Below are positions 199-36,078 of a stretch of DNA of 64,000 bases, in pieces. The notes under the pieces were generated by a model. It ran no database searches, was not told the origin of the DNA, and saw only the letters and a program-made list of their open reading frames with translations. A program made the position numbers and the translations under genes. Every line of letters starts with the position of its first letter. The stretch's first letter is position 1. Source of the DNA: Tubulanus polymorphus (lineage: Eukaryota; Animalia; Nemertea); the NCBI RefSeq assembly GCF_964204645.1, contig NC_134033.1, forward strand, positions 7,200,655 through 7,264,654, in the 5' to 3' direction.

Positions 199-271
199 TC
201 GCTTTCCAGTTCGGCAACAGTGCACTTGTATTGAGCAGTAGAAAACAAACAAATATCGGCGAATTGTCGAA
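199..271 (-). CDS. ARRB: beta-arrestin exon 10b (canonical copy), (V)RQFADICLFSTAQYKCTVAELES(E/D)
   Basis: TTTCACAG acceptor, GTAAGT donor, 73 nt, phase 1 to 2. Matches the canonical VRQ(Y/F)ADICLF..AQYKC motif. Confidence 0.96.
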
Positions 272-1775
272 CTGTGAAATAATGAAGGATGAACGAAAAC
301 TAAACATAAAAAGCTTTTTGATGGGAAAAAAACATCAACATTGATTAAACAATTGTCTAACATACTCAATCTGCTGTACCTGCCAGTGGCATTTTTCGAT
401 ACATGAGGTGAAATTGTGCGAAAACCAGTATATATGGTATAACGAAACTCCCTAGAGCTATGTCTATTGAGTTGGATCAGGTTTTGAGTAGGTGACGAGT
501 TAAAATCAGTATATGTTTGATTATCTAAATCTAGAGTCAAATCCACAGACACAAAAGTGAAACAAGGAACTGGACAAGCCAGTCAATGTTGGGGGTTTAA
601 GATTTCAAAATGCTCTCTAAATTGGGGCATTTAACGCTTTAGTTGTGTGATCAGCTTGGACTGGCTTTAAAGGCCTTAAATTAGAATCGCTATAGGCTAA
701 TCTGGTCTAAACAACTTGACAGAAAGCTATGACAAAATAATGTCCTACAGCACACTAATGGCATCTGGTGGACGACTTGCTAGTAATATCACCAAACCAA
801 AGGTAGATCATTGAACCTTACAACATCCCCCTTATAGACACAGCCCAGCATAACACCAAATTTTTTAACTAAAATTCAAAATTGAATTTCCAAAGTGTTG
901 ACCATTTTATTACAAAGTTTTCATAATCCCATTAAAACCTTTTTGTCGTTCAATTTCACTTTCAAGGCAAAGCAGATTTTTTTCATAGCTAAAAAAGAGA
1001 TTTGAAAAACAGAGCTAAAAGAGAGTTGACAGGCGAAAAACATACATATTTCTAAACAACAGCAGTGAGAAAAATCAATGAATGAATACATAATTGACAT
1101 TGAGATAATAAAAATCATCAAACTCTGTGAAGCGTGATGTACCAGATGTGTGATGTCAGCCCTGGCAGGATAGTTAAAATATCTGTTGAAAGGATCTGTG
1201 ATGCGCAAGTAAAAAGTAAGACATTTTTCATTGAATTTTGATTGAAGCAACTATACCAAAGGCTGCAAATATTGATGTCAGAACATTTTTAAAAAATGCA
1301 TCCAAGAAGATGCAATCTTTAAGAGGATGATATTTAAATCTTCCCCTGCCATGGTCGAACTAAAAGTGGAATGAATGTGAAGAAACTATCATATCTAAAA
1401 TTACAGAAATCATCACAGCTGCCAAGGCATAACAAGCAACAACCAGAACCCTGTTACACAGATGTGAGTTAAAACTTGACCCTCTAGGTAAGGTTATCGA
1501 AAATAAAATAATTTCAACTTTCTAAACTCAAAACCATAGCATACTCGTCACACAAGTTATAAAGAATTCTTTGGAATTAAAACAATTGGAAATGAATTAA
1601 ATTTGCGTCAAACTTAACTCACATGTAATGCTAGGGCCAGAACAACAGTTTACACGTCTGGTACATCAATACTACGTAAAATTAAATACTGAAAATAAAA
1701 ACCAATAAAAATAATATTGACAAAAACGCAACATATACAAATAATGGGATAATCCTGGTAGGTGGCACCACTTAC

Positions 1776-1848
1776 TCCGTCTCCAGTTCGGCAACTGTAC
1801 ATTTATAGTTAGCTTTACTGAACAGCATAATGTCAGCGATTTGAACAA
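1776..1848 (-). CDS. ARRB: beta-arrestin exon 10a (variant copy), (V)VQIADIMLFSKANYKCTVAELET(E/D)
   Basis: Long pyrimidine tract plus GCAG acceptor, GTAAGT donor, 73 nt, phase 1 to 2. No stops or indels. 17 of 23 full codons encode the same residue as exon 10b. Confidence 0.9.
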
Positions 1849-4001
1849 CTGCAGCGATGAGGAAGGAAAAAGAGAAGCAAGTATTAATGAATGTTTATTA
1901 TCATTGAGCATAAATATAATGCATGAGCTCAGTGTATAAAGCACACATGAGCAAGCAATGTTCAAGTTCATACCCAAATTAACCTATTCACATAACCCCT
2001 CATCTTGTGTATGCGGTTGGTTTGACGTTGGACTTATCAGATGTGGCCCAATGGGATGTGGAATGAATTGTGGGGCTAATGAGTTATGGGCCTATTGAGA
2101 GGATATAGGAACAGTGTAAATAAGTAGTTGCTTACATATGTTGGCAATATAGCAGTAAAATGATTTGCCACATGCACCAGAGTTTGCTATGCTCGGTTCA
2201 CGCACACAACTTTTTGAAGTGAAGTTGATGAGTTGACTCAACTTCCTGATTACTGTACTATTGACCCAAGTAGAAAATAAACATAGTTGTATCAAAATGC
2301 ACGCTCATGCACACAGCAATAAACCAGGTGAGTGAAGAAACAGATCAAGTATCTGCAATAAGTACAGAAGATTTTGTATCAATAAAAAGTTCAAAACATG
2401 CCATTTTTACCAGAACAATACAGTTCCTTTTCATATTATCATACACATATCATAAAAATTTCATGAATTTATCGCAACGGTTTGGCGAGTCATCGTATAT
2501 ACGGGAAGTTCCTGCGTCAAAGGTAGATGGTGTCGGCCATCTTGAATTGGAGAAGTCCCCAAAACAATAAGGTTTCACATCATACTATCATACATATCTC
2601 ATATAAATTTCATGAAATGTTCTCAAACGATTTTTGGCACGTACATTGGTAGTTCACATATCAAAAATAGGTCATAATTCGGCCATCTTGAATCATAGAT
2701 TCCCCAAAAGGGTTCCCCACCATACAATTATGCACAAACCATAAAAATTTCACGAAATTGTCTCAAACGATTTTTGAGTTATCGTGTACACAGGAGGCTC
2801 CCGTGTCAAAAGTAGGACAGTGACAGACTTGAGCGCTCACTTCAAATCCAAGTAAGTTTGTATCCAAGTAATTTTATATCAAATGTATTGTTTCATTTTG
2901 AACACAGGGATGACGCTCCATATGAAGTTAAAACAGTAAAATTATTCTTAAATGAGACAAATTTCCTGTGCACCACGCAGATTGGTCATATTGTTTTCAA
3001 TGTAGAAAAAAGTGATAAAATATTTTTGCCCTAAAATTCTGCTTAAAAATGTCTACCTACCTATCGACTCACCGTGAGTCAGCATTTCAGCAAACAGACA
3101 ATTAATTTGGGGTAGCCTAATATTTGATAGAAGTTTGCTTGAATAATGATATACCCTGTATAATTGTTTAATAAATTGCCCATGGGCAAAAGTGTGGTTT
3201 ACCTTGAAAGCTAGAGGTCATTTGGAATAAGGGCATTGCTTGAAAAATCTTTTTAATTCGTGACTTCAAAGTTCCATAAGTTTATATTGTATTTTATCTT
3301 TCTTGAAGAATTATTTTGTAGTCAAATAAGACCAAAGATATACATTTGTTTCAGGTCCACGTCCAAAATTTTGTAGGGTACAGGTAGGCACGGCAGGGAA
3401 ACTATATTTTATTTTCAAAAAAATATGTTTCACAATATGAGAAAATATTCAAATAAGGCCATCCCAAAATAATTGTCTGTTTGCCGTAACACCGACTCAA
3501 CTTTGCAGGATGAGTCGGTAGGTAGGTAGAAATTTTTTTTTTGCAAAATTTTTGGGCAAAAAAAACAAATTTTTCACCTTTGGGCTTTTTTACATGGAAA
3601 CAATATCGCAAAAAAATCATATCCATTGTGCACGGGAAATTTGTCTACTAGCATAGATTTCAAGAATTATTCTAAAATTATAACTTCGTCTAGAACGTCA
3701 TCTCTGTGTTAAAAATGAAACAGTACATTGAATATATGCGCGCTTTTACGTTACCAGCTTTAATATAGTCGCTATTAAAATGAGTGGCAGCTTATTGGAA
3801 CACTGCCAGTTTCCCGGAAAACTTAAACTAGGCCACATGTTAAGGCATGTTTTCACATGATCCACACTTGAATTCAAACATACGTAGCTCGTACGTCGGC
3901 AGTGGGTCGGTCGGCCGTTTTTATCAAAAATTCAAAGTTTTCACTCAGTACCTTTGAAGTCAGGTCGGTTGGGTTACGGCAAACAGACCATTGGCGGATG
4001 T

Positions 4002-4424
4002 GTGAAATAATTACATCCTCACCAGCAATGAGCATTTGAAATACGCATGTATACGGCACCTAATCCAATGAAACGTACGCCGTTCTATGGCTTTCCCATA
4101 ATTATTTTAGTAGCGCCGGAATTTCCCATATATCCCAAAAACAGCCAATCCAATTCGCTTGTAGAGACGACGCTCCCCAATCGAGGTCATTGCAATTTTA
4201 TACGCGAGAGCCGAGAATTTTCCACGCCAAAACAGTTTTCGTAGAATTTTAACTCAGTTGACCATGTCATCGACGGAGGTTCGCCATGTCTTCAATCGCA
4301 TCGATTATACATCGTTTAAGCCGAGAACCAATGAAACAAATGCTCACATAAAAAAACGTACTGCGATTTTACATGAATTAGCTCAATGCCAACATCAGAT
4401 CGCTGACAAAGGTAAACCAAAAAA
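4002..4424. repeat. dispersed repeat; other copies at about 13708-14042 plus 15749-15840 (split by an insertion) and 43600-43750
   Basis: Long shared blocks, e.g. CACCAGCAATGAGCATTT...CATGTCTTCAATCGCATCGATTATAC...GGTAAACCAAAAAAG. Confidence 0.75.
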
Positions 4425-5218
4425 GGAATGACGTAGAAATATCTTCTCTCCATTGTGTAATTGTAACAAAACGTGACTATTATCATAGATGCTTGAACGA
4501 TGGTAGAAGTTGGAGCTGATTTACTTGTATTTTCACATATTTCATAGGTGTTGGCACGTCCATATTTTTTAAGGTCAAACTTTTAATAATTCATTTTACT
4601 CGTAGGAATAACTCATATAACTTGTATATGACCAACTTTCACTAGGATTCAAACATATGTGACTGGTGCTGGCAAAATCAGTCGGAAGTCGCATTCATTC
4701 ACTAAGCGTTATAGGCTATTTACTGCAGTCAGTGTTGAAAATATCGAATTTCAGTTTTCACTATTAGGCTATACTTTAAAAAGTTTAACTTTAAATGCTT
4801 CAAACATCGTTTTTAATTGGGGGTATTGAATCAATCATAATCAACATAGTCTCTAAAACAATCGAAATTAGCGGTCTATTTCACCTAAAATATTTTTACA
4901 ATCAGTAGTCTGAATGGCACAAACCGGCTATTGATCGACAGCTCAGAAGTAGTGCTAAATGAAAATCAGCGTAAGAATATCGAAATACGTCATTAAAAGC
5001 CAATGAGAGGGCTTGAAAGATCTGTAAACAATTCCCTTTGTTGAACGCAAGCCGAGCGTGTGATGTAAGCTGATCGCTGGTTGGCTTATCAACGCATCGC
5101 GCATTGCACACTGGGCAAAAAAACATGGCTGCCGTCGTAAACAAACGCAACAGTTAATTTCATTCTACTTGTTTTGAAAAGATTTCTCCTTTATTCTTGT
5201 TTAAATTCGTTGATAATA

Positions 5219-8200
5219 ATGTCACTATCGAAGGAAAAACGTGTCGCGGATTCGTTGAACAGTCTGAGATCGTGCAATTTGGAGTCACCGGCAATCGAAA
5301 GGCAGTGGTTGACACTTTTGGAGGATTATTTTGTTAATGATGTCGATGATGAGTGTGTTTCCTCTTCGTCAGAAGGATCTTCAGATGAAGAAAGTGACAC
5401 TGAAAACGATGTAAATAGATCTGTTTATAACTCCGTACCTGTTAATAACACTATTGTTTCACCGAATTCTAATGTCCTGTCAAAATCGTCATGTTCTGCG
5501 GCTACGCCAGGTCCAACATTGACGGCTCGACGAGTAAATAATGATACTGTTGGTGACCACTATCCAGCTACAAATCAGAGGATAGTTAGTGACAACGAAG
5601 ACTCTTCTGCTGAAGATGATACTGCGGACGTCGTGGATGGTGTTCCTGAGATTCTCCGTGATGTGCCGGCTACTGCGAATAATCCTCGAGAAGAACTAAC
5701 CAGAATTGAAAATTTCTCGTGTGTGTCCAGCTCATCGAAAAATAGCTGTAAACTAAATGATGGAAAGCCTTGTTTTTCATCCTTCGATAAAGATGAAATC
5801 TTTGATCTCAGAATGTCAATGAGTGCGTTAACTGCATTTGAGAAGGACTTAATGATTCTGGGCAAGTTGGGATCATTTATGCGTAATGACTCGTTGACTG
5901 CATGTTCAAAACGAAAGACGCAGAAAGAATGAAAACAGCAGAGAACATGGTATTTCGTCCTCGGTCATCGATGTTGTCGTGAAACCTTCAAATTTGTTCA
6001 CTGGTAAGTAGGCCTAATTTTTTAATTCTTTTTAATAAGAATAAAACCACTTATTTTTACAACATGTACAACAAACCATGTCAATGATGGATGTAGGCCC
6101 TATATGCACGCGCTGTTTCCTTGACGTCTGAACTCGATAACAGTAGGTAGCTTTGAATGAAGAACGTGAGATAGGCCCAATGACAATATTCAAATGTACG
6201 GCTTTTGTTTTCAGGGACTTAAGTTTTTGGTTAAATATTTACTGGTTATTAATTATAACCCCTTTCTTTTCAGCATGAGCCAAGACAAACTTACAGCCTT
6301 GATCAAGCATTATAAAGAGCATGGTATGACGCCACGTTACAAAAAGTCTGGTGGGCGCCGGGAGAACAACAAGCACATTATCACATACGATGATACGTCT
6401 CGCGTTGTGACATTTTTGATGAACTTCGCAGAAATGCATTCGATGGTCCTGCCTGGTAGAGTGCCTGGTTATAAGCGTTTCAACATTAAGTTGCTACCCT
6501 CCAGCATGACAAAAGCAAGCATTTGGAGGAACTATAAACAAGCTATGATTTCGACAGGTAAGCTTTCATAGATTATCACAGGCATCCAATTAATTTTTAA
6601 TCTTTTTCAAAAAACTACACGTCAAGCGAAATTCTGTACTTAAGTCGGGTTTCAATGCCAACACAAACTAATTTAATGTACCCGACGTGCTATGGAAGTT
6701 GGATCAAATTGCCAACTGTTATAGGCGTTGTGTAAAATGAAGCAATCAAATTCATAACGTTTATCCCATTTCAGACTTTAGGCATCAAGATTTAGTTATG
6801 TGACGGACTAACTGCACTGAGTTCTGTATCAGGAAATTGATAGGTTTCAATGTTTATTTTTCAGAGAATCGAGCAGTCAGCCTTCATTCCTTCAGAAGAT
6901 TGTGGCGTACATTAGTTCCGTTTATTGTTATGAACCGCCCAATGACAGACTTATGCTGGGTGTGCCAACAGAATAACTCCACTATATACCGTAGTGTGAA
7001 CATCCCAGAGGAATTAAAATCTGAAAATCTGAAAAAACAGGAGGCGCATTTAGTAAAAGTTACGCTCGAGCGTAGTCTGTACCAGAAAATGGTTTCAAAC
7101 TGTAAGACGGTTGTCAAAGGCCTTGGCCTTAAGAATTTGGAGAACAGTCCTCCAGCATCACGCGATGTTAAAATGCATTATAGTTTTGACTTCGCGCAAC
7201 AGGTTCATTACCCGAATGACCCTTACCTACCCGGACCCATGTATTTTGTTAGAGGTACGAATAGCTCATAGAGAGCCTCATCAGGAGTTACGTGTAACAA
7301 CCAAATCTAGGATGAGAACTTTAGTAGATACAACGAGCGACACGTCGATTCTTTTTAGAGATTAGATTTCATGCTATTAAACGAGTATTTAGGAGAATAT
7401 ATTGGTCAAAAACATGTAAGTTTAACCAGTTAATTTGTATTCTATTGTATTTGATAATGAATGTTTTAAATAGGAAATTAATCAAAGATCAGTGTGCAAA
7501 TTTATTTAAGATCAGAGTTTAAATTCTATATGTTATTAATTTCAGATCAGCATTTCATCATTTCATGTTCGTTATGTCTCGATATTAAAATCCAATATAA
7601 ATATAAATCCTAAAGAAAGGTCTTCTTCACATTAATGGAGCCAACTACATATTTCCTGACACCACGTAAGTGTGGGCTATTTGGAATTGTGTGAAGGGTT
7701 ACCACAGTAGGTGAATTATTTGATTGACGAGATTGTTTGCGTATCTAAGGGATCAAACAGCGTCATAAGCTACTTGGACCATTTTTTCGATAACCACGGT
7801 TTAGGGGAAATGGATGTCGAACTGCACTGTGACGACTGTAGTGGCCAGAATAAGAACAATTTCAAGAAATATCACCATTTTAGGTAGGTATCTGTACACG
7901 AAGTCCTAATGAAAAATCAAATTTGACACAGGGTTGCGGGTTCAAATTCTAATAGCAAGAGAGTATCATATCGGTATCTGCTTTGGATGGCAATCGGTGG
8001 TTAAATAATAATAATAATTATGATTATTATAGATGACAGAATTTTGAGAAAAATAGATCACTGCCCTATACCTGTTTTGTATAGTGATAATGTTTTTGCA
8101 GCCTAGAAGAATACAACTTTTGATTAACGGACTATTATTCAAAATATTTACTTTCTTATATTTTCAGATTTGACAGTAATCATCCAGGAAAGGTGTTTAG

Positions 8201-8555
8201 AAAGTTGTATGCGGATTCAGCGGAAGAAGTATTCACCCTTGCTATCGATCCGAATGTGATACCGCACAACACAAAACCGGACATTATTCCTCCACCTGGA
8301 TTATCGGCAGAAAGACAGTTGTACCTGTACCAAAAAATCCGGGAATTCTGCAGTGTTGAAACTAGAGACATAGCTTGTCCGTTACCGCAGGCTTTACCAG
8401 CTGCACCACAAGACTTACCTGTACCTGTAGTTGTTCCTTCCACTAGTGACTTGCCGGTACCATCAGATTCTGACAGTGATGCTGACTTTGCTCCTCCACC
8501 AGCGAAACGCGGGCGTGGTCGAGGTCGTGGACGAGGTCGTGGTAATAATCAGTAG
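5219..8555 (+). pseudogene. spliced DDD/E transposase pseudogene; exons about 5219-6003, 6274-6557, 6865-7883 (minus the LTR insert), 8168-8555
   Basis: Motifs TDLCWVCQ, HYSFDFAQQVHYP, YFLTPRKCGLFG, NYLIDE and LHCDDCSGQNKNN. GT-AG introns keep the frame. Lesions: in-frame TGA at 5930, frameshift and TAG near 7690-7710, apparent deletion after QNKNNF. Confidence 0.85.
7247..7649. mobile_element. solo LTR inserted in the transposase ORF
   Basis: 403 bp, starts TGTTAG, ends ACTACA, perfect 5-bp TSD TATTT (7242-7246 and 7650-7654). Removing it restores GPMYFLTPRKC. Confidence 0.85.
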
Positions 8556-10627
8556 ATCAATACTAAATACCTTTTGATTGTGAATCAAATAGGATTATCT
8601 TGCAGCAATCGGGGGCAGAAATCTATATAGTCCATTTTCTGGATTTGTGAAATCAGTGTTTCGAAGTGAATTAAACTTGATAGTAATCAGCCGTTTTCAC
8701 TGTCAAGTTCCATATGTAGCTCCAGAGATACACTTTATACAGGCATATGTGATAATTGTATTCTAATTGGTTGATCTGTGCAGTTTCGCTGTTGTTAGTG
8801 ATGAAATAATAATTGAGTTGAATATTATGAAGATAAAAATTTTCATTTATTGCCGATTTTATCTAGTTCCTGGATGGACTGCTGCTCTCATTTTAAATTC
8901 AAAATACTTTCTTATAATAAGTGTTATATGCTCTAGAATCATAAACAATGACTTATTTATTTGGTATAGTGCAATAATAAGTCACATTACTCAGAAAAAT
9001 TCAATTAACTGTGAAATCTAATTTTTCCGAAAATATTTTTTTCTTCAAATTTAGTCATTTTCTATCATCCTAAAAAAAGTACCAATCCAGGAACTATATT
9101 TTTGCTTGAAAAACAAAGGGGATGATGTCTCGTACCCCTGGTAAAAATTTGGGGTCGATATCTCTATTCTAAGATACTGGTTGCTATGGTGGATTGATAT
9201 TTCTAAGTACCGAGACTTTAACCCTCGATTTCTCAGAATCCTTTTCCGCTGACTTAGTCTTCAAAATTTAATAACTCAGTGAGTTTTCGAGATATCAACA
9301 TAATTTTTTTTGCATTGAATTCCACACAATTGTGGCTTTCAGAATATGTATAGTACTCAATTTTGATAAGGTGACACAAGTGACTGATTTTGCCAGCACC
9401 GGTCACATATGACAATGGATTGATATAAGACCAGTACATAGGACAAGTACATGAAAAATAACTCTGATATCTAACTGAATATTTATCAACTACATATTTT
9501 TGAACTATAAAAATTAATCAATCTAATTCTCATTAATTCTAGTTCTTATCACCCTTCATAGGTACGTACTATTTGCATTATATCCTCGGCTTATTTGACA
9601 TTATATCAAATGGATTTATACATACATGTTTAATCAACCCGCATGATGGTAATTTTCCTCCCAATGAATCTAATCACCAATGATGATGCTTGGACCACAC
9701 CCTGATAAATAGCTAATGAACATCTAAAACCCTCAACAAGCCTGATTGATTGAAAATGGTCGGTTCTAAGGAAATAGATTGAGCCACTTTCCTAGGAATA
9801 GATATATTATGTGGATAAATGAGTTCAGTCAGATTTTCATGATAGATAAGATGACTTGACACCAATGTCGATCTAAAATAACGAACAATTTCAGCATGTC
9901 TTCCAAAATCGATACAGTTAACCAGTTTTCATTAATCAGAAATTACCCTGTGAGGAATTGATAAAAAACAAATCACTAAGATATCAGTCCCCACTTTGTT
10001 GTGATGGTCACACCCTTTATGGATACTATTGTTATGTCTTTACAATAACTTAAAGGTCAGGGATGTACACCGCACCCAGATGTACTGAGCCATGTATAGT
10101 CACGTCTGACCCACCATCACCTAGTTGAAAACAAACATAATTGTCACTCATTCTTATTGTTATATTTCAATCATTCCTAAATGCATTAAGAAATATTTCT
10201 AGAATGAACTTTTAAGACGAATATAGTTTCCCGTTGTCAAATATTGGCAACGTAAGCTTAGAATATTGCAAGAGATATAGGCACCCTGACAAGCTACATA
10301 CCCTTAAATCTCAAACTGAAACTAAAGATCCCTGTGTTGTAGAGGAAACAATAAACAATAATCAATTTGTGATGGGCCTTTAATAGTGGTACATTAAGGG
10401 GTGATATATCTGTAAGTGATTGTGAAAGTGGAACTCATAGATGATTTAATTATCAAGAACAATTCTTCAATGAATGTAACTGAATCGATGTCGTAATTGA
10501 TTGAAGACCGATCGAGGCAACGTTGGTAGTCAGTGCATCATTACACTCTTAAGTTTCACTAATGAATTCCCAAGTCAAGTAAAAATAAAGCAATATCTGT
10601 TTCATCAGTGGTATTTGATAACAGGAA

Positions 10628-11656
10628 AGAAATTCTAAAAATGGGCTTGCTGACATGGTTGTACTGAAAGCTTGCTTGGTGGTTTTGTATTTCTGTAGCA
10701 GAATTAAGCGAAATTTGAACTGATTACTTGTTAAAGAGCTAAGATATCGGTGTTGTCTTACATTGTTACATAAAATGTTACACACGGGGACTGGGAATTG
10801 GAATGGTTTTATTGTAGACCCGGACCGAATTAGTGCAAGCGTTTAGATAGTTGTTATTTGAATATTTTATTGCAGTATCTTAACGGAATCTATCATCTGT
10901 TGATAATTGCTAGATTATCAGATTGTGTGGAAATGATTTTGCATAGAAAAATTTACAGCTGAAAGAAAAAACGTGACTTCAGGCGAACACGAAAACAAAT
11001 AAGAGCCACAATTTTTCTTTTTAAAATAATAAAGACATTAAGCAAGATTAAGTTACATTTCCTTCAAATGACAATCCACTACGATCATCCGATGAAGTTT
11101 ATTGCCACCATAGGCTACCGCCCCCTGGCTCTTTGAAGTGACAGGGAACAAGTCTTCAATTCAATTCAGAATTTATTTTAAGGAAAAGCGGTTTTTAAGT
11201 TTGAGATATTTAAACTGAAAAATATAAATGTTCATACAGAGATTTTACCAATTGCTAACGCAAGCACCCAATGAAAGTAAAAGAAAATTAAAAGAAATTT
11301 TTAAAAACGTGAAAGTAAATGTTTCATTATGAAATTTTATGTCAATAAAGAATGAACTGAATTGTCGGCAGCACTTTGCCGCGTATGGATACCAATTTCA
11401 AGCCTGATCACGCACGCTCAACCAAGGTTGGTATGCGCTGCTGAAATAACAAAAACGATTAAACAAAATCATAAAACAATGAAAACAACAACCGTTATAG
11501 CCAATATACGAAAGGAACCTAGATTTTGTTACTGCATTAAATGTGTGTAAATATCAGAGCCCAAGAAAGGTTCTAACGAAAGTAATCGACTCCCCAAGCA
11601 AGTTATCAATCTGTGTGATAGCAATATGGGCTTGCAAGCATGCAAGCCCATGAAAA
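10628..11656 (-). mobile_element. HINE family 3, copy lacking one end
   Basis: Colinear and highly similar to 46158-47207. Ends in hairpin ATGGGCTTGC-AAGCAT-GCAAGCCCAT. Confidence 0.75.
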
Positions 11657-14040
11657 CAAACAAGAGGACCATAAGGACCATATGGTCAATGACAGTGTTT
11701 CAAATTGACTCGGGTGAGTGGATGAATGAGATGACAGTTGTATCAGTGAAAACAGATGTAAATTTCTCGTTATATCTTTTTAATACTACGCGGCAAACAG
11801 GGTATTTTTCAACTGTCATTTTGAGTCAGTCCATATTTACTAGAGGCAGGATGCCATCGCTTATCTCACCGTGTGTACACAGGACTACTGTATCTAGCAT
11901 GTACTAACTAACTAAGAGAGTACAGCGTCTTCGAATGGCCCAGTTTGCGTAATGTGATGCAGGCATTACTGGTTATTTTCATGAAGAAAATCCATCACTC
12001 GCAATGTGCAACTCGCAAAGGCATCTGGGGGCACTCCCCCGGAAAAATTTTATATTCATAGGTGCTAAGATACGTTTTCCAAGCAATTGGGGGCCATAAT
12101 GAACTAGTTTAAATTCGGTAATTTTCATCTAGCAGAGATCGTCGATAGTTTGTTCGAGGCACTTTTCTGTTGTATATTGGTAGGCTTATGTGCATAATAT
12201 AGTTCCATGTTCTCAAATCTGTTAATATAATTCAATTTTATCATCAACAGCTTAGAGGAAGCGTTTAATAATTTCGATTTGCAAAATATTTTGGTGACTT
12301 TGATGGAGGCGCTTTACTAAAAAACTATGAGAATGTGTTTATACAATTATTGATGCATCAGTAATAAAATTGAGCGTGTGACCAGACCGTCTTAGAAAGC
12401 CAGATAAGTAAATAAACTCCTGATCATTTTCTTAAGCATGACAGAATTTCTTTAAGCATGGTGTATCTATTATTTGCATGGCGGTAAAGTGCCGTAGCAT
12501 GGCGGGCCGCCATGCTAAAACCCCTCAGCAAGAACACAGTAAATCTTAGCGTCAAGAATTAGTGCAAACAAGACGCCGAGGTCCGCATAAGCAGGATCGT
12601 AGCAAGTTAGCTGCAGTTAAACCGCACGTTAAAATTCAACTATATACTACACAATATTGATCGACATGTATGGTGTTTTTAATACGAATTAAATTAGAAT
12701 TGCTTAAAATTAATCTGCATACTGATACCTACGTTTTTTTCGTCAAGATAATCCCAAGGGTATGCATAATTAATTTTTATTCATGTATTTCTAACAAATC
12801 TTTTTTATTAACAGCATAACCTTGATCTAAAGATTAACGGCTTCGTTGAATTTAGTGAGCTTCACACTAAAACGAGGGCGCTATCATCACAGCTCTGCAG
12901 TAAATACCGCAAACGACGCCGCACATCGACATGCAATTTTCAGCAGAGCAAATGAAAAATCATCGTCAATCTTATTTCTTCTTTTGTAGATTTCTCATTG
13001 GAGAATTTTATATGTTGTATCAGTAATATATAATAAATTGCCCATGGGCAAAGTGTGGTTTACCTTGAAGTTATATACCTGAAGCTGGAGGTTGTTTGGA
13101 GTAAGGGCATTCATTGCTTGAAAAATCTTCGTGAAAATTCGTGACTTCAAAGTTCTAGAAGTTTATATTGTTTTTTTTCATTCTTTAAGAATTATTTTGT
13201 AGTCAAATGAGACCAAAGATAAACATTTGTTTATGGTCTACGTCCAAGGAAACTAATTCATATTTTCATTAAAATATCTTTCACAATATGAAAAAATATT
13301 CAAATAGCGGAAGCTAAAACACCGGAGCATAGTATTAGATCGTTTTAAATCCTGGAATTTACCACTACAATATTCAGACCTCGACCTATACCTATGGTTT
13401 GCCTGCTTAGTATTTTCAAGTCAAAAGAAATTACAATTTATCACGAATTCTATCAAACAGAAAACACAGCGCTCATCTTCTGCTACCACGATTATTCAGC
13501 CTGTTATCATATCAAACATGCACGCGCCAAGCAGCGTTACAACACCACCATATAGCAGTCTGTATGAGCGTGTGTTTGTGTGTGCAACAGTCTAAATGTT
13601 TAACAATCCCGCGCACGTGGAGGCCTTGTGTAGTGAACGTCCGCTTCACTTCAATCTCAATCAACACAATCACCGGGTATTAAAATGAAACAATACCTAT
13701 GGCAATATGTGAAATAATTATATTCTCACCAGCAATGAGCATTTAAAATTCGCACATATACGACACCTAGTCCAATGAAACGTTCGCCATTAATGGCTTT
13801 CCCATTATTATTTTAGTAGCGCCGGAATTCCCCATATATCCCAAAAACAACCAATCACATTTGCTCGTAGAGACGACGCCCCCAATCAAGGTCATTGCAA
13901 TTTTATAAGCAAGAGCTAAAAATTTTCCCGCCAAAAACAGTTTTTTGTCGAAATTAAACAAATTTGACCATGTCATCGACGGAGGTTCGTCATGTCTTCA
14001 ATTGCATCGATTATACGTCGTTTAACCCGAGAACCAATGA

Positions 14041-15750
14041 AACTAGAAAGAAACTTTTTAATAGGTCGACGACAGAGAATAGAAATTAAAAGTGGAACTC
14101 AGGATGAATAGACTGGTTGCTAAGGCTTACACACTGTAGTGCTTTTCGCAAGTAAGGTCCAAACGAAGTTCCACTGTTAGACAAAGAGTTGAACATTTAA
14201 TGCAAGTTTAAGGTATTACAGAGATTAAAGGCAAAACGGAGCAGTTAGCATCCCTGTAAGTTTGAAAACCAGAGGGAAAAAGGTCCCGAGGCTCGAAATA
14301 TTGTAAGCTCGATCAATAAAATTGTTGTCGGTATGGATTGATATTGCCTTACATACAATTAGAGGGGTTGAGAAACGAAGGTATCATTTTAGCCATCGGT
14401 GCATGTTTAATCAAAGTTATACTTACCATGACCACAGGATACAGTCTGCTCTTGGCACAATCGCCAAGAACCCATGACATAGGCCAATGACCATGCAGTC
14501 CATGGGGTACAAGCTTCACATCCATCTGTTAACACAGTTATTTGAAGCTGTTCACAGACTGAACCAAAGGCAACTGCTAACTGAACCCTTACGCCCTGGA
14601 GCTAATCAAACGATCTACCAAGTGGAACAGAATGAATATCTACCAGCGGTCTCATTAGAATTCTAACAAGATATCTTAAAGATTGATTATGGGAATCTTT
14701 GACCTGAAAAATGTTTGATAGATCAAGGAGAATGATACAAAACTACAATGAGGGTGTAGGCCGGTTACTGACGAGAAGTTACCTAATCGTTGGTGGTTAA
14801 AGCTTTTAAAATCAGATGGGATATTTGTGAAAATATCCGAACGTGAAACTAATGTGAAACTAATATGGCTACAGTCAAAATTAAAAAAGTTACTGACGAA
14901 ATTAAGATACTGACTTAAAGGTTTTAATGGTTTCACAAAAGGAATTTTTTCTAGTAAAAGTTATCGTGAATAATATTTCTTCTGCTAATTCAAAACCTTT
15001 TTGATATAACGAGCGTGTGGATTGTAGCCTACGCGCTCCGTAACGCGCATTATCTATTACTGATACATACCACGTATATAAGGCGATATTGCCTACGGGA
15101 CTGTAACTAATGATATCGACGCGCGATCTCATCACTGTGCCGCAAACTAGATACACATAATCGGGCTCTAAAAACGGATCGCTGACGCGAAATTCCAAAA
15201 GAATGAATGACGATAAATCATTTTACTAGTAATAGTAAGATAGTTTTCAGCGTTGCTCGACGTACGAGTATCGATTCAACAGCAGCTAATGTTGAATCGA
15301 TGTAGCACGTGTACTCGCCGAGTCCATATCAACAATGCGTAAACATTCAATTAATCCGCTGACACACACCAAGAAAATACGGAAATTTCAGGCAATAAAC
15401 GACAAAATAAATCTCCCGATATCTATACACGGAAATAAAGAACTAAATCATGAAATAGGCCTATGTAAAGTGCTTATTCAAAAATGTATGCGTGGCACCA
15501 TTTTAAGCGCGGACTAATACAGTTTTACTTCTAGACAGGGTTCAGAATTTCAATTTTTTCATTTCGGCAATATTTAATTAACCAAGCAACAAAAATTCAC
15601 CATATACGCCCTCAACCTTCCTTTTTTCATATTTAAGCTACTGTGAAAGTTTCAGACGCGTACGTGGCGTTAAACAGACGTAATCGTTTGACGTGACGGA
15701 TTTCACGATAACAATAGGACGACGTGTACTACGTACCGTCGTCCTAAAAA
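14041..15750 (-). mobile_element. HINE-like insertion splitting an older repeat
   Basis: Starts AACTAG, ends in hairpin TAGGACGACG...CGTCGTCCTA plus an A-run. The flanks rejoin to match the uninterrupted copy near 4325-4350. No TSD. Confidence 0.65.
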
Positions 15751-18700
15751 TTGCTCACTTAAAAAAACGTACCCCGATTTTACATGAATTGGTTCAATGC
15801 CAACCTCATACTGCTGACAACAGGTAAACCAAAAAGCCTACTTCGACAGCAAATGTTGCACAATTCTGCTCTTGTTGTTTACGTTAGTAGATCAAGACGA
15901 CGTCACACTACATCGCTAAAATCCCCAAAAACGACATAAAATTGCAAATTTACCCAATTTAGGTTTCATCAATAGCCTTCAAAAGCAGTTGCCATTTAGC
16001 TGCCGTTATAACAGCCAACTAAATGCAGACCTTAGCCCGTGAATCATTTCACACTCGGAGGAGATAGCAGTCAACACGAATTCAGCACTCCGTTTTATAA
16101 TAATAGATTCAGCTGCGCTGAATCCAATAAAATCCGGGCTATAGTGTAGAACCCTGCAGAGACAATAATCTACCGATCCTCTCCCAGTCAGTCTAAACCA
16201 CTAACTGCGTAGCTTCATTGCCAGGTAAAACCGATATAGACAATTCACTGACAGGTAAGCCCTTCATGCGCCTAAAAACTATCCACATAGTTCATTGAAT
16301 ATAATTTTCTGGCAACTACAGCTTAGCGCTTTGCAAAAAAGTTTAGGGTAGAACAAAGTACAGGCCGCCCTGGCAAGCACGGTTTCTTGAATCTGAAGCC
16401 AAAGATCTTTTCATGTGTTTTTATCTCATACTGTCTTGCATATTTTCTACCTATTCGAAAAAATTCTGAGCTGAAAAATGTTGCCCATTTCCTATTTAAA
16501 TGTATATCAAAATTTAGGAAGAATGCATCTAAGAGAACTCTATTTCCATAGAATTGTCCCCCAATAGGGTTTCAAAACTTCGATCCTCACTCTTCACATG
16601 TAAACAAATAGTTCAGGTGTTAGAGAAGATCAGCCAAAAAATAAGGTCTATCAGTCTTCTTGTTCAGTGCCTTATAATTTCTTTTTTCAAGTAAAGTAAA
16701 CTCATTTATTTTGATACCTCGTCAACACTACAGCTTTTCTCCACTGCATCTTTTCAGCATGTTTAGTTTAGGCCTACAACTCGCCAGTACTTAAATGGTA
16801 CTTAAATGATATATTCTACTAAATATCCGGTAAATTCTGTAAAGGAAAATAGACTATTGTTAAACAAACTGTTTGAACTGTCGGCCAAATCACTGGGAGT
16901 AATAAATTTATTTGTACTTGATTTGATTCTCATGGCGAGGAATACTTGCGGCGGATCCGCGGAACGACGATGTAAAGACACACGTTGGTTCATCGATCTT
17001 TACAGCTCAAAAGTGCTTATAATATTTAGAGCAGTAAATATCCTGTGGATCGGTTGAGTGTACTGATGAAGAAAATGGGTAATTGTTAAAAACTGTTTGA
17101 AGACTGCAGCTGTATGTGAAGTCTTGAGGCAGATTTATACTTGAATTGATAATCGAAGTGACCAGCAGCCTGTGGTGGATTTCAGGATGACGACTCAGAA
17201 AAACATGTCGCCTGATTGAATGGGGCTCAAATTTCGATGTTTACGGCCCCACAGAGTTTTTTTAACATTGATTAATCAAAATTCGCCAGGAGTATCTGTA
17301 GATCGAGGTGAGCACAAAAATTAAACGGATTGTATCAGAAACAGCGATAAGGTAAAAAAGCCTATGTACTTTCGACGAAAATAGTGTAGAAAAGGGAATA
17401 AAAAATCACGTGAATATCAATAGGGTTTTTTGCTGTGGAGAAACAGAAAACCCTAATGAATCTATCATTGCAATTGATTGAAGGATCAAAATTAGATTCA
17501 ACAAGTAATGGATCCTGATTATCTTTTGACTATAAAAACTAATATTTCTAATGTTGTCTATAACAGCCAAAAGTTGTTCACAGGGGACAAAAACCTGCCA
17601 CATGATATCAGTAATATCCAGCTTTCAAATACCTGTACATGTAATACAATTTTACCCACTTATCATATTAGCTCTGGCATCACCATCACTGTGTGAGACT
17701 GCCTCCAGGGGCGCTATTTATGGAAACTCATTACACTGATAGCGGTGACTTAAAAGTGAGCAACACACTGAATAATATCTGAATTCCTCTTTCCCGTTCT
17801 TCCTTTCCTCGAGCTCTTTAAAAAGGCCTTGCCTATTCTGTCTTCTGTCCAGGATTAGGCTTTCCACAATTTTATCAGTAAGGGCATCAAATGCTTACTG
17901 TGGGAATCCAAGAATCATACACCCTCATCTTTATATTACAGATTTTTTGCACAGTAATGCTTCAAAGTGAACTACGTATAGTTTTAGCAACAACTTCAAC
18001 GACGCTGTACAGAAAAGTCATGGCAAATAGAAAAGATATGGCAAATAGAAGCAGATTTGAACATCAAACAGGGAACATGAAGTATCATCCAAAAAGGCGA
18101 AATCCGATGGAAATATCAAACAAGAAACAAGATTCTTAATTTGACTTTCTTGAACTTACATGATGGTGCAAGTTTAATCCCTAAACTTCGGAGATTCAGA
18201 ATTTACCCACTTGCCTTCAGTGTTTACTTCAGCGGCATGCAGTTGCTAAAATCATTTGCAGTGTCTTGGAAAACTTTAACTAGGCCACACGCGAAGTGCT
18301 CGTTTCCTATACATGCACTTAGCAAACAAATGTGAAAAGATCAATACAAAAGCAGGTAGTCTGTGTGACGCAATGATTATAGTTCACTAATAGCGATTAT
18401 CTAGGCCCATTCATACCTAAGCACTGTTTTTCTGCAGTACTGCTTGGAATAACATAACATCCTTAACTTTTTTCCATCTCATTTATGTTTTTAACGGATA
18501 TTAATTGGCGTTTTGGAAAGAAATGAAATATGATTAAAACTTGAACCGTACATCATTCCATCGGCATCCAAACGTATTCCTAACACGTGTACGCTACCTT
18601 TCAATTGGTGCCACACATTTAACGTGCAAACGAAGCGCTATTTACCAAGGTAAATTCTAAGCTGCACTGTACCACACAATATTTGACAGATGCCATAGTT

Positions 18701-18987
18701 CAGTGCCTCATTGTTCTGCAATGTAATATACATGTGCCTATAACGAAGAATAGCAGGTAAATTCATTTGAATGCAATTTGAAACAAAACATTCATACAAG
18801 TGCTAGAGCGAACCTAAGGCGTGTACTACATTTCGTATCAAAAATTAAAAGCCTCCACTGACCTTTTCTCATAATCGTGCAAATAAAATTGTTGATTATA
18901 CATGTGTAGCTGCAAAGCAATGATTATGTATTTTCTGCTTAGCAGCATCATTAATACGCAACCTTACGAAATCATAAATAGAAATGG

Positions 18988-20010
18988 AACTAGGGGTCCA
19001 GGGACACCATGCCCACTTGGAGAGTGGTTTCAAATGCTCAACAATCTAACAATTTCAATATTCAAAGCCCCCTGGCGACCATATACAAAACCAATGAACT
19101 TGAAACTCACCATGATCATAGAACATGTCAACGGCTATTATTTTGTAATTGATTGTGATAAGAAAATATGCTTCGTTACCAATTGAATATGGAAATACTA
19201 ACTTATTCTATTATTCAATGCCCCCTGCTGACCATATGCAAAACCTAATGACCTTGAAGCTCACTACAATCATAGAACATGTCATGAGCTACAACTTCGC
19301 AATTGATCATGGTAACAAAATATGCCTAGTTACTAATACAATAAGGAAATACTAAGTTATTCTTCTATTATGATATAGAAATACTAAGTTTGTGTATTAT
19401 TCAACGCCTTCTAGTGGCCATATACAAAAAGGAGTGACCTTGAAACTCAACAAAATCATAGAACACGCAATGAGCTACCGCTCTCCATTTGATAGTGGTA
19501 ACAGAATATGCTTAGGTATCAATATAATGTGGAAAAACACAAATGTGTCAATCCCACCTATGAATGAGTACAGATGACACCAAGCTAGCCGCCAATTGCA
19601 TCATTATTGGCTGATCAAAAATACCTGTGTCAGGTATAAAAGATCCCTTTCCGAAGAGTGACCATCACAAATTGCAATGAGAAATGGTAAACCAGTAGGA
19701 AGTTACAGACTCAGAATTCGGGCCAAAATTGACATTTTTTGGGCACCAAAAAGTACATGGGACAGCCATCTTGAGTCCTATCAACCAAACTTTTTTTACG
19801 CTGATGGGCCTTTAGGGGTAAACAATGGATGCCAGTCGGCCATCTTGATTCTGATATGGCCAGTTTTTGGGCTGAAGTTGTGTCTAGGGTAGATACATGT
19901 GTACAAATATTATGACTTCCAAAAATAAAGGGATTCCGTCTACGAACGGACAACTGACGAAAAGTGAATGCAATAGCCCGCAGGGACTAAAGTCCCAAGT
20001 GGGTTAAAAA
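18988..20010 (-). mobile_element. HINE family 1, copy 1
   Basis: AACTAGGGGTCCAGGGACACC end, internal tandem units of about 150-155 bp, GGAC-like microsatellite, terminal hairpin GCCC..GGGACTAAAGTCCC..GGG. Confidence 0.8.
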
Positions 20011-20467
20011 TTGTTTATTGTCGGGGATTCAAACCTGATATGACAGTAACAATTACGTCAATGTATTATACATGTATCAGTGTAAGACCCTACAAATTAC
20101 TTTTGATATGACGAGAGTTCAAACAAGCACAAGATACTATTCAATAAAAGTTCACTTAAATTGATGGGAATTGGATTTATCCCAAAACTGCTGGTTCGAG
20201 TTAAAACCAAGTCGACTTTTAATGGAATTCAAACCTAACAAACTGTCGCACTTAAAAATTTGAAATTGGATGAATTTCGGGGGGGGGGCAAAAGGACACA
20301 ATTTTGGTGGCCCACCTTATCAAATCTTACATCATATGAACCTTGACTATTTACTAGAAAATAACCAAAACTTGTAATGCATGGAAATAAACAGCAAATG
20401 AGCTATTCGGTATCGTGATAAACTTGGATTTTACCTTGCATTTTCTATCAGTGTAGGATAATATAAA

Positions 20468-21200
20468 AACAAGAGATCCAAGGATCTTAATATCTCGGGT
20501 GCAGAATGTTATCTTTGTAATGTATAGGCGCCATCTGATTGATGCATCTTAATGGTTTTCCTTGAACACTTCATGGATGTGTAAAATCAGCTGATTTCAG
20601 TGAACAACATCATCGAAATCCAATCAGCAATCATCGCGGCAATACACGAGGTTTCGGCCTATTCGATTGTGCGCGCATAATCTTCCGTGAAGTAGCGTAT
20701 CGATTGAATCTTCGGTAATTTGCATAATGAAATAGATATGGGGAGACGGATTCGATACTACGGCTATCAAATTAAAAATAAACATATAAGACTCTCCCAT
20801 GACTGGGAAATGAGAAACTAGAACCGAGCAGATTAATAGATGAGAAGATTAAAAGACCGGTTTGTCTGCGTCAATCGAATATGCCCTTACATTGATTGAC
20901 AGCGGGAGCAGTTATTTTACTTCAATGTAATGTTGTACATCGGTCTTCTAGCCGTTTTATGAAACAAAATGCTCCTTGAAATTTCTAAAATAAAAAATCG
21001 CCACAATTTCGTCGATTTCTCTTAAATGAACGCGATATTTAAAATTCCATTTCCAACAGATTTTAGCCGCATGATGAAGCTACATTTTGCACATAAACAT
21101 AGTAGATTGCATGACTTCGTGTCAAAGTTATAACCTCATTTGTTAAAAAAAATCGATTTTTGGACCCATTACAACATCTCGGGCTTCGCCCGAGATAAAA
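20468..21200 (-). mobile_element. HINE family 4
   Basis: AACAAGAGATCC-AA-GGATCT palindrome plus subterminal ATCTCGGG at one end. ATCTCGGGC-TTC-GCCCGAGAT hairpin plus A-run at the other. Confidence 0.7.
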
Positions 21201-22801
21201 AATAGTATTTAAGAGTTTTCACCAGTCATGGCAAATACAAACTTCTCCCTTGACCTGACAAATGAGCCAGAGAAGGATTAATCAATTTCAAATAGACTGA
21301 ATACAATTCGCGCAAATATCGGCTTTAAACGGCACAAGAACTACGGAAATACACCCAGCGAGGATTCGAATGCGACAAAAAGATCTTATTGACACCACAT
21401 AGTGAAATTCCTGAGTGCTAATGACAGCTACCAAAATTTCATACTTCAGAATTTTCATTAGTCAAAATCACTGTGATTTCCAAATGCAATTGAATACTTG
21501 TCCTGGTACACCACTGAATAAGATTGACTTGAGTCGGTGTCCTGTTTCCCCACTGAATAGCCATTATCTTTTATCAAATTGAATTAAATTAGTGTAAAGC
21601 TCCAATAGATTTGATTGAATTGCAGATAATTTTGTGAAATTGTGAACAATCCTAAGTTCATCATTGATGCCAGGTGGCTATGATTATGATATATTCAATG
21701 ATAACTTTTCGTTTATGTGACATAAGTGTTCAGATTATAGGGAATTCATCATCAAAAGCCAATGAGAACAATGTTCTTTTCCAGATGAAACAATATTCGC
21801 GGAAAAAAAAAACTAAACTTTAAATGTTCATTACTTTGTAACAGAAATGGTATTTGTAGGCATTACCTTAGCATCAATGCCATTGTCTGATCAAGACAAA
21901 ATTCCAAAATAAACTGTTATTAGCATTTCAAGCACGTACGTAATGATTTTTCCAACTCAACAGAATTCGAAAATATTGATTTCCACGTATCAATTGGGTG
22001 AAACAACCCAGAAAAACTAATAGAAAGAAAACAATTCACCTACATTAGCTACTGAATTATTCAAATCCCAATTCGATAATTTCTAACTGTCTCCAACAGC
22101 AGAGTACACAACGCAGCTTGTTTCAGAATAACAAAATGGCCATGTACCATTTCAAAATTCAACCCAGGACCCCAATATAAAGACCAGTGCTAACCCCAGT
22201 AACTGACTGTTACTATCTGTGATGGCTATGTGACAAACCTAAAAGAAATATCATAGAAAATGTCTTATTAATTAACATTGAAAAATCATTTCAATATCAT
22301 AAGTAATTTTACTTGTTTCTGAAAACATTTAAAAATGATGATATACAAAGATGGGAAATCAATCCTGAGCCATTTTGAAATTGTCAACACACTCCTAGAA
22401 AGAAAATGTCACCACACAAAAACAGAGTATACGACCCGGTGAAAAAATTATCATCGCAATTAGAAATGATCAAAATTATATTTCATTAGCATATTTTCAG
22501 AGTGATCGTCCCGCCCTTCACATAATGAATGGCAAATAATATGCTGAGAGGCTATACAGTTGTTAAGATAAGGTAATAAAAATCAAATAATCCTGAAGTC
22601 ATATTGAACTCTGTGAGACTGAGTCCTGGTAAACGAATGTAGGTAAAAATCCCCTGGTAAATTTCCTCCCGGTAAATATCCAAACTATTTAAGTTTTTCA
22701 AGATAAGAATATTCAAGTACTTTATCATAGTTTGCTGAGAAATCAAATTTGGGGGATTTTTACCTGTTACCCTGGTAAACACATGTTGTTAGGAGACATA
22801 C

Positions 22802-22886
22802 CTGATATCTTGATCTTTTTGACACTTTTACTTGTGTTATTATCAACTAAAACGTTTACAGCAATTGATTCACCATGGTAATATTT
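22802..22886 (-). CDS. ARRB: beta-arrestin exon 9-equivalent, [28 protein letters not shown](V)
   Basis: TTTTTCAG acceptor, GTATGT donor, 85 nt, YYHGE and VKKIKIS motifs, ends in phase 1. Confidence 0.96.
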
Positions 22887-34791: not shown

Positions 34792-35635
34792 AATTGAAAA
34801 ACCACCGAATCACTAATATTTAAGTTTTTGCGTTTGACATAGTGGGCACCTATCCAGAGGTTACGTGATCTAATAATAAGCTCATTTTAAGCGCATTATA
34901 ATTAACCATATGATTTATATTTCGGACAGTAGACATGAACTATTCCATTTCAGCTGTTAGCCGAGGCTACAAACCAGATTTGTTCATTTTCATACCTGAA
35001 ATTTAGGGGGTTATCAAATAAATAGGCAACCAACTATAATTTCTGCAAATTAGCCCATTTCCATAAGGCGTCACTTTCAGTCGGAAAAGTTATCACCAAA
35101 ATATTCCAAGGATCATACCCTATCAACTTTTCAATTACCATAAAGCTCTTACAGTTTTCACTCTATGGATCTCCAAAGTTACTACTGATTTTCCTACTTT
35201 TTAGTTAACAATGATGGGCACTCTGAGGGTTTTTCTCAAACCACACATGGGCACTGAAAGAGTTAATAGGAAAACATTGCAAGCAGGTGCAAGTTGACAC
35301 TTTAGATGGTAGATAACGAGAAATGTAACAGAAGAGATGAGTAAACCTGCTATGAACACCTTCACAACGAATCGCACCAGACCGACCCAATAACCAGTCA
35401 CACCAGACCAGGAGGTTGGCAACACCCTAAACCCCCTATCAATACATCATGTTTCTGAGATTTCTTGCGGATCTGCAGAGAATTTGTATCTGTAACCTTT
35501 CATAAAAACACTCCACGTTGTAATGATGATATCAAATCTAAAGATTCGGAAATGCTTCTTGAGCTAAAAGATGTTTCCACAAAAATAGAAACGCCCAAAA
35601 ATGAAAGAGCAATTATATGATATATGATAACATAC

Positions 35636-35771
35636 CTCTTTATCAAGACTAGCTTCTAAACGTAAATGCCCCGAACTGCCAAAAAAATCTTTTGTGGCTT
35701 CCGCACTCGGCTGTGGTGCTGGTTCCTCAGGGGCGTATGTTAATTTTCTAATTGCCAAACGGACGGAGTTC
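35636..35771 (-). CDS. ARRB: beta-arrestin exon 8-equivalent, [45 protein letters not shown]
   Basis: TAG/GTATGT borders, 136 nt, polar-core Arg (IRK) and EASLDKE motif. Confidence 0.96.
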
Positions 35772-36078
35772 CTAAAAATGGCAAAATCATAGCATTAAAT
35801 AAATCAAATATATAAATAACAGTTTTTTAAATGATTAAGTATTTTATTCACAAATTACATCATGAGATACAATCAAACTTGCCACACGTAAAACATTATG
35901 GGCATGTGTGGATAATAGTATAGATATTACATAGTAGAAGTCAAGATTGGATAGTAGAAAAAGAGCCAAAATATGAGAAAAAATTTGAAAATTTGAAAGG
36001 AAAAGAAAAGAAGAAAGATTACAAAAACATATACATGAATACATACATCATTCATACATGAATACATTCATCAATAAA

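What the first reader, a model, noticed from the sequence alone, without database searches (positions are those of the whole stretch)
1776..1848. The variant exon rewrites the lipid-binding and receptor-selectivity surface of the C-domain
Seen: changes from 10b to 10a are R>V, F>I, C>M, T>K, Q>N and S>T. By alignment from memory these are beta-arrestin-1 positions 236, 238, 242, 246, 248 and 258. Established: K232/R236/K250 form the C-domain phosphoinositide/IP6 site. This beta-strand pair and the C-loop form one of the two receptor-discriminating elements mapped with arrestin chimeras, and Y238/Y239 is a known selectivity residue. Exon 10a loses the Arg, keeps the K250 equivalent and gains a Lys in the C-loop. 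Visual arrestins, as I recall them, also lack Arg here (VEQV, VQQG). Inference: splicing could switch between an endocytic, PIP2-binding arrestin and one with altered GPCR or opsin preference. That would achieve by exon choice what vertebrates and insects achieve with paralogues.
Basis: partly seen in the sequence, partly recalled or inferred. Interest (0 to 1): 0.8.

Follow-up and report, generated by a model that had tools for sequence, protein, structure and literature searches.

The report
Swappable exon pair in ribbon-worm arrestin
The only beta-arrestin gene of the ribbon worm Tubulanus polymorphus carries two interchangeable copies of one 73-base exon, also found in other invertebrate genomes, so splicing can probably make two proteins that differ only on the surface that meets receptors and membrane lipids; no RNA evidence could be obtained here.

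Summary
Window 1776-1848 (minus strand) is an intact 73-nt exon ('10a') with AG/GTAAGT borders. It is a diverged copy of the exon at 199-271 ('10b').

The gene is the single beta/visual-type arrestin of a nemertean genome (Tubulanus polymorphus). It has a clathrin box and an AP2 motif in downstream exons.

Only transcripts with exactly one copy stay in frame. Synonymous sites between the copies are saturated while dN/dS is about 0.15.

Tandem pairs with the variant copy upstream occur in three other genomes. A variant-type exon alone occurs in three more. The variant copies never carry a basic residue at 236 and usually carry one at 246.

The literature confirms that the exon lies inside the C-domain receptor-preference element (arrestin-2 residues 233-262) and holds R236 and K250 of the phosphoinositide site.

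Not shown: transcripts (the one possible RNA run laid nothing) and any functional difference. An 'endocytic versus non-endocytic' switch is not supported. K232, K250 and the clathrin and AP2 motifs lie outside the changes, so both isoforms would keep them.

The scan noted this pair before on the same DNA (s1-503425/6).

The parts
1776..1848 (-). Exon 10a, the variant copy. It is 73 nt, starts with 2 bases of a codon and ends with 2 bases. It encodes the equivalents of beta-arrestin-1 residues 235-259 with V236, I238, M242, K246, N248 and T258.
199..271 (-). Exon 10b, the canonical copy. It has the same length and phase and carries R236, F238, C242, T246, Q248 and S258. Its 25 residues are identical in three other genomes.
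272..1775 (-). Intron of 1504 nt between the two copies. It cannot be aligned with the other flanking introns. It holds a 17-nt inverted repeat (1135-1151 / 1652-1668).
1849..22801 (-). Intron of about 21 kb between exon 9 and exon 10a. It holds no further exon-10 copy.
22802..22886 (-). Constitutive exon 9 (85 nt, ends with 1 base of a codon). It carries the K232 equivalent.
35624..35773 (-). Upstream arrestin exon (start of the C-domain). Borders are approximate (tblastn span).
39002..39073 (-). Upstream arrestin exon. Borders are approximate.
39317..39400 (-). Upstream arrestin exon. Borders are approximate.
39924..40175 (-). Large N-domain exon (about 84 codons). Borders are approximate.
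44046..44108 (-). N-terminal arrestin exon. Borders are approximate.
50981..51013 (-). N-terminal arrestin exon (the homologous part only). Borders are approximate.

Best explanation
Exons 10a and 10b are a tandem duplicated, mutually exclusive exon pair in the single non-visual (beta-)arrestin gene of the nemertean Tubulanus polymorphus. Each encodes the beta-hairpin plus C-loop (residues 235-259) on the concave face of the C-domain. Exon 10b gives the canonical, almost invariant hairpin with Arg236. Exon 10a gives a variant with no basic residue at 236, a new Lys at 246 in the C-loop, and changes at 238, 242 and 248. Shown: both exons are intact, only single inclusion keeps the reading frame, both are under purifying selection, and the arrangement recurs in other genomes. 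Inferred: splicing yields two arrestins with different dependence on membrane phosphoinositides and/or different receptor preference. Both would keep K232, K250 and the clathrin and AP2 motifs. The expected effect is therefore a tuning of receptor/membrane engagement, not an on/off endocytic switch.
For: Structure of the pair: both exons are 73 nt, in the same phase, with strong splice sites.
Reading frame: 9-10a-11 and 9-10b-11 stay open. Including both gives a stop at codon 91 and skipping both gives a stop at codon 47.
Selection between the copies: 49/73 nt are identical, pS is 0.68 (saturated), pN is 0.22 and dN/dS is about 0.15. The flanking introns cannot be aligned.
Other genomes: tandem pairs with the variant copy upstream occur in L027, L034 and L029. 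A variant-type exon follows exon 9 in L030. A variant-type exon occurs alone in L035/36 and in the flatworm Cichlidogyrus.
Selection across genomes: synonymous sites are saturated in all pairs. pN is 0.13-0.16 between the window's 10a and three other a-type exons, against 0.00-0.07 for b-type.
Variant signature: position 236 is non-basic in 7 of 7 variant exons. Position 246 is K/R in 5 of 7 and His in one more.
Gene identity: this is the only arrestin gene of this type in the genome, with a clathrin box and an AP2 motif in downstream exons.
Functional map: PMC10030194, PMC5681653 and PMC11173308.
Against: There is no transcript evidence. The only possible RNA run (X4) laid no contig on either exon, so neither use nor exclusivity is shown. 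One related genome (L028) and another (L031-33) have only the canonical copy, so the variant is dispensable in some lineages. In L027 and L034 the variant copy is highly diverged (pN 0.31-0.46), which shows weaker constraint. The loss of R236 alone may not abolish PIP binding (PMC10030194). The relatives' organisms are unidentified, so the depth of conservation is uncertain.
Confidence: 0.7

Rival explanations
1. Exon 10a is an unused relic of an old duplication (a pseudo-exon). Only 10b enters mRNA.
For: No RNA evidence was obtained for 10a. 10a evolves much faster than 10b. It is absent from L028 and L031-33.
Against: Synonymous sites between the copies and between species are saturated. Even so, 10a keeps its exact 73-nt length, an open frame, AG/GT borders and pN of 0.13-0.22 in several genomes. 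Neutral DNA would have decayed, as the unalignable introns show. Two lineages carry only the variant type as their coding exon.
Confidence: 0.08
2. Exon 10a works mainly as a regulatory 'poison' exon. Including it together with 10b shifts the frame and sends the mRNA to decay, which tunes the arrestin level.
For: Double inclusion gives a premature stop in exon 11. The 1.5-kb intron between the copies imposes no steric block on double inclusion.
Against: A poison exon needs no conserved protein sequence. Here amino-acid sequence is conserved (dN/dS about 0.15) and specific residues recur across genomes: non-basic 236 and basic 246.
Confidence: 0.07
3. The 10a isoform is a visual-type arrestin made for opsins in photoreceptor cells, replacing a missing visual-arrestin gene.
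For: No second arrestin gene exists. Like vertebrate visual arrestins, 10a lacks Arg at 236 and has an aliphatic residue at 238.
Against: The clathrin box and AP2 motif, hallmarks of non-visual arrestins, lie in downstream exons outside the pair. Elsewhere 10a is no closer to visual arrestins than 10b is (squid visual arrestin E = 0.031 for 10a against 0.005 for 10b). No expression data exist.
Confidence: 0.12

Closest known systems
Tandem duplicated exon substitution (mutually exclusive exons), e.g. insect myosin heavy chain and the human events reviewed in PMC9741552 and PMC2257972
   Same: Adjacent homologous exons of equal length and phase. Exactly one is needed to keep the frame. The duplication is ancient, and the isoforms are identical apart from one homologous segment. 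In insect Mhc, one gene with exon choice does what paralogues do in other animals.
   Different: No such event has been described for an arrestin gene in the library searched. Exclusive use is not yet shown by RNA here.
Vertebrate beta-arrestin-1 / beta-arrestin-2 paralogues and the PIP-binding-deficient 3Q mutant (K232Q/R236Q/K250Q)
   Same: The exon encodes R236 and K250 of that site and most of the C-domain receptor-preference element, 233-262 (PMC10030194, PMC11173308). Exon 10b is close to both vertebrate proteins: 21 of the 24 aligned residues match beta-arrestin-2 in the printed alignment.
   Different: Diversity comes from exon choice within one gene. Only R236 of the triad is lost, and a Lys appears at 246. 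The vertebrate paralogues both keep the triad.
Vertebrate visual arrestins (rod and cone)
   Same: No Arg at the 236 equivalent (Glu instead) and Val/Ile at the 238 equivalent.
   Different: As I recall, visual arrestins also lack K250 and the clathrin and AP2 motifs. This gene has both motifs, and 10a keeps K250.
Arthropod kurtz / beta-arrestin gene models with two tandem copies of the next exon
   Same: A tandem exon duplication in the arrestin C-domain of an invertebrate with a single non-visual arrestin.
   Different: A different exon is duplicated: the exon-11 equivalent, 49 codons. It is a multiple of three, so double inclusion stays in frame. This is an independent event.

Membership tests
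Non-visual (beta-)arrestin | Arrestin N- and C-domain homology along the whole gene | tested here: met
   Exon-by-exon tblastn with arrestin proteins covers the N-domain through the C-tail. Exon peptides hit beta-arrestin PDB chains.
Non-visual (beta-)arrestin | Clathrin box and AP2 beta2-adaptin motif in the C-tail | tested here: met
   An L-I-Q-L-E box lies about 20.9 kb, and an F-E-D-F-A-R-L-R motif about 26.3 kb, before the window start on the same strand.
Non-visual (beta-)arrestin | C-domain phosphoinositide triad K232 / R236 / K250 | tested here: met
   Met for the 10b form: K232 in exon 9, R236 and K250 in 10b. For the 10a form position 236 is Val, so the triad is incomplete.
Mutually exclusive exon cluster | Adjacent homologous exons of the same length and phase with functional splice sites | tested here: met
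Mutually exclusive exon cluster | Reading frame kept only when exactly one copy is included | tested here: met
Mutually exclusive exon cluster | Transcripts contain one copy or the other, never both or neither | tested here: inconclusive
   One possible RNA run was found. It laid no contig on either exon.
Mutually exclusive exon cluster | Both copies conserved as coding sequence in other species | tested here: met
   Pairs occur in L027, L034 and L029, and an a-type exon in L030. pN is far below the saturated pS.
Visual arrestin | Absence of clathrin/AP2 endocytic motifs (from general knowledge) | tested here: not met
   Both motifs are present in downstream exons outside the pair.

The most novel reading that the evidence does not exclude
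The pair is an ancient spiralian device that encodes two arrestin 'subtypes' in one gene. The b-type hairpin has the canonical PIP2 triad. The a-type hairpin has its basic residue moved from strand position 236 to C-loop position 246, which changes which receptors are engaged and how long complexes last at the membrane. Lineages then kept both (nemertean-like genomes), only the a-type (the monogenean flatworm seen here, L035/36) or only the b-type.
Probability: 0.3. Interest if true: 0.75.

Novelty: new member of a known kind. Interest (0 to 1): 0.6.

Why it matters
Reviews of the field state that invertebrates manage with a single non-visual arrestin and that it is unclear why vertebrates keep two (PMC11173308). 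This exon pair suggests that some invertebrates diversify their one arrestin by splicing. The diversified part is the roughly 30-residue C-domain element that chimera work identified as setting receptor preference, and it includes one residue of the phosphoinositide site. That gives natural, evolution-tested variants of the element for studying PIP dependence and receptor selectivity. It also makes directly testable whether one gene supplies two arrestin functions.

Tried and rejected
RNA evidence. The look-up of sequencing runs returned three DNA-like runs and one doubtful RNA run. Read laying placed none of that run's contigs, so expression remains open.

Protein word search. A search with the a-type region of the flatworm protein found only that protein. 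A search with a mite-like arrestin returned only arthropods.

The search for related loci. A two-sequence a-type alignment gave one locus, L030.

Pfam scans of the genome missed the short exons of this gene except exon 9.

Paper searches found no report of duplicated or mutually exclusive exons in an arrestin gene. They found nothing for the accession numbers of the related contigs either. The original receptor-discriminator papers are not held.

Paralogue test. I checked whether the a-type-only and b-type-only loci come from one sample and so might be paralogues. No shared sample was seen, so this is inconclusive.

Structure. An AlphaFold model of the natural a-type flatworm protein was poor in this region (pLDDT 46-76). 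It shows only strand-loop-strand. No fold search was run on it.

Exons were concatenated only inside a local script to count reading frames.

Rejected readings. A chance ORF is ruled out. A third exon copy is ruled out. A second arrestin paralogue is ruled out because C17 is a 99.4%-identical haplotig.

Full report
OBSERVATION. On the minus strand, window 1776-1848 is a 73-nt open segment. It is preceded by a pyrimidine-rich tract ending in cag and followed by GTAAGT. Window 199-271 has the same length, phase and kind of borders. Read in frame (window:1775-1849:- and window:198-272:-), the two give 25-residue peptides that agree at 19 positions. They differ by R>V, F>I, C>M, T>K, Q>N and S>T. 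phmmer against the Protein Data Bank aligns residue 1 of both peptides with residue 235 of full-length bovine beta-arrestin-1 (1JSY, 1G4M). The match is not chance. Of 23 open AG|73|GT frames in 34 kb of the locus, these two score 123 and 128 and the next best scores -1.

GENE AND ORGANISM. An intronless arrestin-domain ORF elsewhere in the same assembly is 100% identical to an NCBI protein of the nemertean Tubulanus polymorphus. The window is contig C9:7200655-7264654 of a 268-Mb assembly. The arrestin gene runs on the minus strand for at least 77 kb.
- N-domain exons lie at about 51.0, 44.1, 40.0, 39.35 and 39.0 kb, and a further exon (start of the C-domain) at 35.7 kb.
- Exon 9 lies at 22802-22886.
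- A 21-kb intron follows, then 10a, a 1504-nt intron, and 10b.
- Exon 11 lies 7.7 kb beyond the window start (L012 2272-2418), with further exons about 19, 21 and 26 kb beyond it.
The last two exons carry a clathrin box (L-I-Q-L-E) and the AP2-binding F-E-D-F-A-R-L-R motif, so this is a non-visual arrestin. Searches of the whole genome with exon 11 and with a 333-residue arrestin find only this locus and a copy on the 181-kb contig C17. That copy is 99.4% identical over 6 kb and has the same spacing, so it is a haplotig. The animal thus has one beta/visual-type arrestin gene.

MUTUAL EXCLUSIVITY BY FRAME. Exon 9 ends with one base of a codon. Each exon-10 copy supplies two bases, 23 codons and two bases. 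Exon 11 starts with one base. A local frame count shows that 9-10a-11 and 9-10b-11 stay open. Including both copies gives a stop at codon 91, and skipping both gives a stop at codon 47. Exons were concatenated only for this count.

SELECTION. Between the copies 49 of 73 bases agree. The proportion of synonymous differences is 0.68, close to saturation. The non-synonymous proportion is 0.22, and dN/dS is about 0.15. The flanking introns cannot be aligned. The duplication is therefore old, and both copies have been kept as coding sequence.

OTHER GENOMES. A profile-free search with exon 11 returned arrestin fragments from many assemblies, and I fetched their loci.
- L027 (a 5.9-Mb ENA contig) has exon 9, a diverged 73-nt copy with intact AG/GTAAGT, then a copy identical in protein to 10b, then exon 11.
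- L034 shows the same arrangement.
- L029, a GC-rich genome with roughly 90-110-nt introns, has two 73-nt copies: the upstream one with Val236 and the downstream one with Lys236.
- L030 has exon 9 followed by an a-type exon 80% identical to 10a, and the contig ends 580 nt later.
- L028 and L031-33 have only the canonical copy.
- L035/36 and the monogenean flatworm Cichlidogyrus casuarinus have only an a-type exon. The flatworm exon shares V236, I238, M242, a basic 246 and T258 with 10a.
Synonymous sites are saturated in every comparison. The non-synonymous proportion is 0.00-0.07 for b-type exons. It is 0.13-0.16 between 10a and the exons of L030, L035 and the flatworm, and 0.31-0.46 for L027 and L034. 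The variant exon is thus constrained, but much less than the canonical one. Across seven variant exons, position 236 is never Arg or Lys (V, S, V, V, F, H, V). Position 246 is K, K, K, R, K, H, S. The recurrent theme is loss of the basic residue at 236 and gain of one at 246. The organisms behind L027-L036 are not identified, so the age of the pair, and whether all a-type exons descend from one event, stay open.

WHAT THE SEGMENT DOES IN ARRESTINS.
- K232/R236/K250 of beta-arrestin-1 (K233/R237/K251 of beta-arrestin-2) form the phosphoinositide site. The triple Gln mutant is impaired in internalisation and in recruitment to receptors that depend on PIP binding. The authors suggest that a PIP chelates K232 and either R236 or K250 (PMC10030194).
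- The same residues belong to the C-domain IP6 site of arrestin-3. Y239, D241, C252, P253, D260 and Q262 of arrestin-3 are six of its ten key receptor-binding residues (PMC5681653).
- Chimeras place the C-domain receptor-preference element at arrestin-2 residues 233-262 (PMC11173308, Fig. 3 legend). That range encloses the exon (235-259).
- The C-loop contacts or flanks receptor loop 2 in complexes (PMC7913897).
- Rod and cone arrestins in the PDB have Glu at the 236 equivalent and Val or Ile at the 238 equivalent.
Two of the six changes therefore hit named functional residues (236 and 238), and three more lie next to or in the C-loop (242, 246, 248). All six fall at even positions, in register with K232, R236, Y238, D240 and K250. 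The chance of that is about 0.005 if changes were placed at random, which fits change on one exposed face. I could not verify exposure. An AlphaFold model of the natural a-type flatworm protein shows strand (234-242 equivalent), loop, strand (248-257 equivalent). Its pLDDT there is only 46-76.

WHAT IS NOT SHOWN. The run search returned three DNA-like runs and one run guessed to be RNA. That run laid no contig on either exon, so it says nothing about use. No binding or localisation property was tested.

MECHANISM AND RIVALS. The most likely reading (0.7) is a conserved mutually exclusive pair that yields two non-visual arrestins differing only in this hairpin. Both predicted isoforms keep K232, K250 and the clathrin and AP2 motifs. 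I therefore expect a shift in phosphoinositide dependence and/or receptor preference, not a change from endocytic to non-endocytic. A dead pseudo-exon (0.08) is hard to reconcile with the intact frame, borders and low pN against saturated pS. A pure poison exon (0.07) does not explain conserved residues. A dedicated opsin arrestin (0.12) is possible, but nothing beyond residues 236 and 238 supports it.

NOVELTY. Tandem duplicated exon substitution is a well-known device (PMC9741552, PMC2257972). The searches of the held library found no report of it for an arrestin gene. Automated gene models may already list isoforms, and I could not look these up. I file it as a new member of a known kind. 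The scan's first readers noted the same pair on this DNA (s1-503425, s1-503426).

Noticed in passing
G000 contig C17 (181 kb), e.g. L023 = C17:62000-68000: An uncollapsed haplotig of the arrestin locus. It is 99.4% identical over 6 kb and has the same 10a/10b pair and exon spacing.
   Followed up: yes
window 1135-1151 and 1652-1668: A 17-nt inverted repeat, 16/17 complementary, inside the intron between 10a and 10b. The rough chance expectation is 0.01-0.05. It could be an RNA stem that affects exon choice, or a transposon end.
   Followed up: no
P0186, P0189, P0251 versus P0247, P0001, P0002: Arthropod kurtz/beta-arrestin gene models (leafhopper, termite, fig wasp, ostracod) contain two tandem copies of the next exon (exon-11 equivalent, 49 codons). 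Other isoforms contain one copy. This is a separate tandem exon duplication in the arrestin C-domain.
   Followed up: partly
L028 7908-7991 and 8094-8177: A recent tandem duplicate of exon 9 in a related genome (79/84 nt identical). The second copy lacks an acceptor in the matching phase, so it is probably a pseudo-exon.
   Followed up: partly
P0121, P0147, P0116, P0126, P0035 cluster: Annotated or predicted arrestins of monogenean flatworms and Trichinella, and of several unidentified organisms, have no Arg or Lys at the 236 equivalent. Some also lack K250. The phosphoinositide triad is therefore not universal among invertebrate arrestins.
   Followed up: partly
L031-33 versus L035/36: Contigs from related metagenome series carry an arrestin gene with only a b-type exon, or one with only an a-type exon. 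They might be paralogues in one host, which would mean the pair was resolved into two genes. No shared sample was seen.
   Followed up: partly
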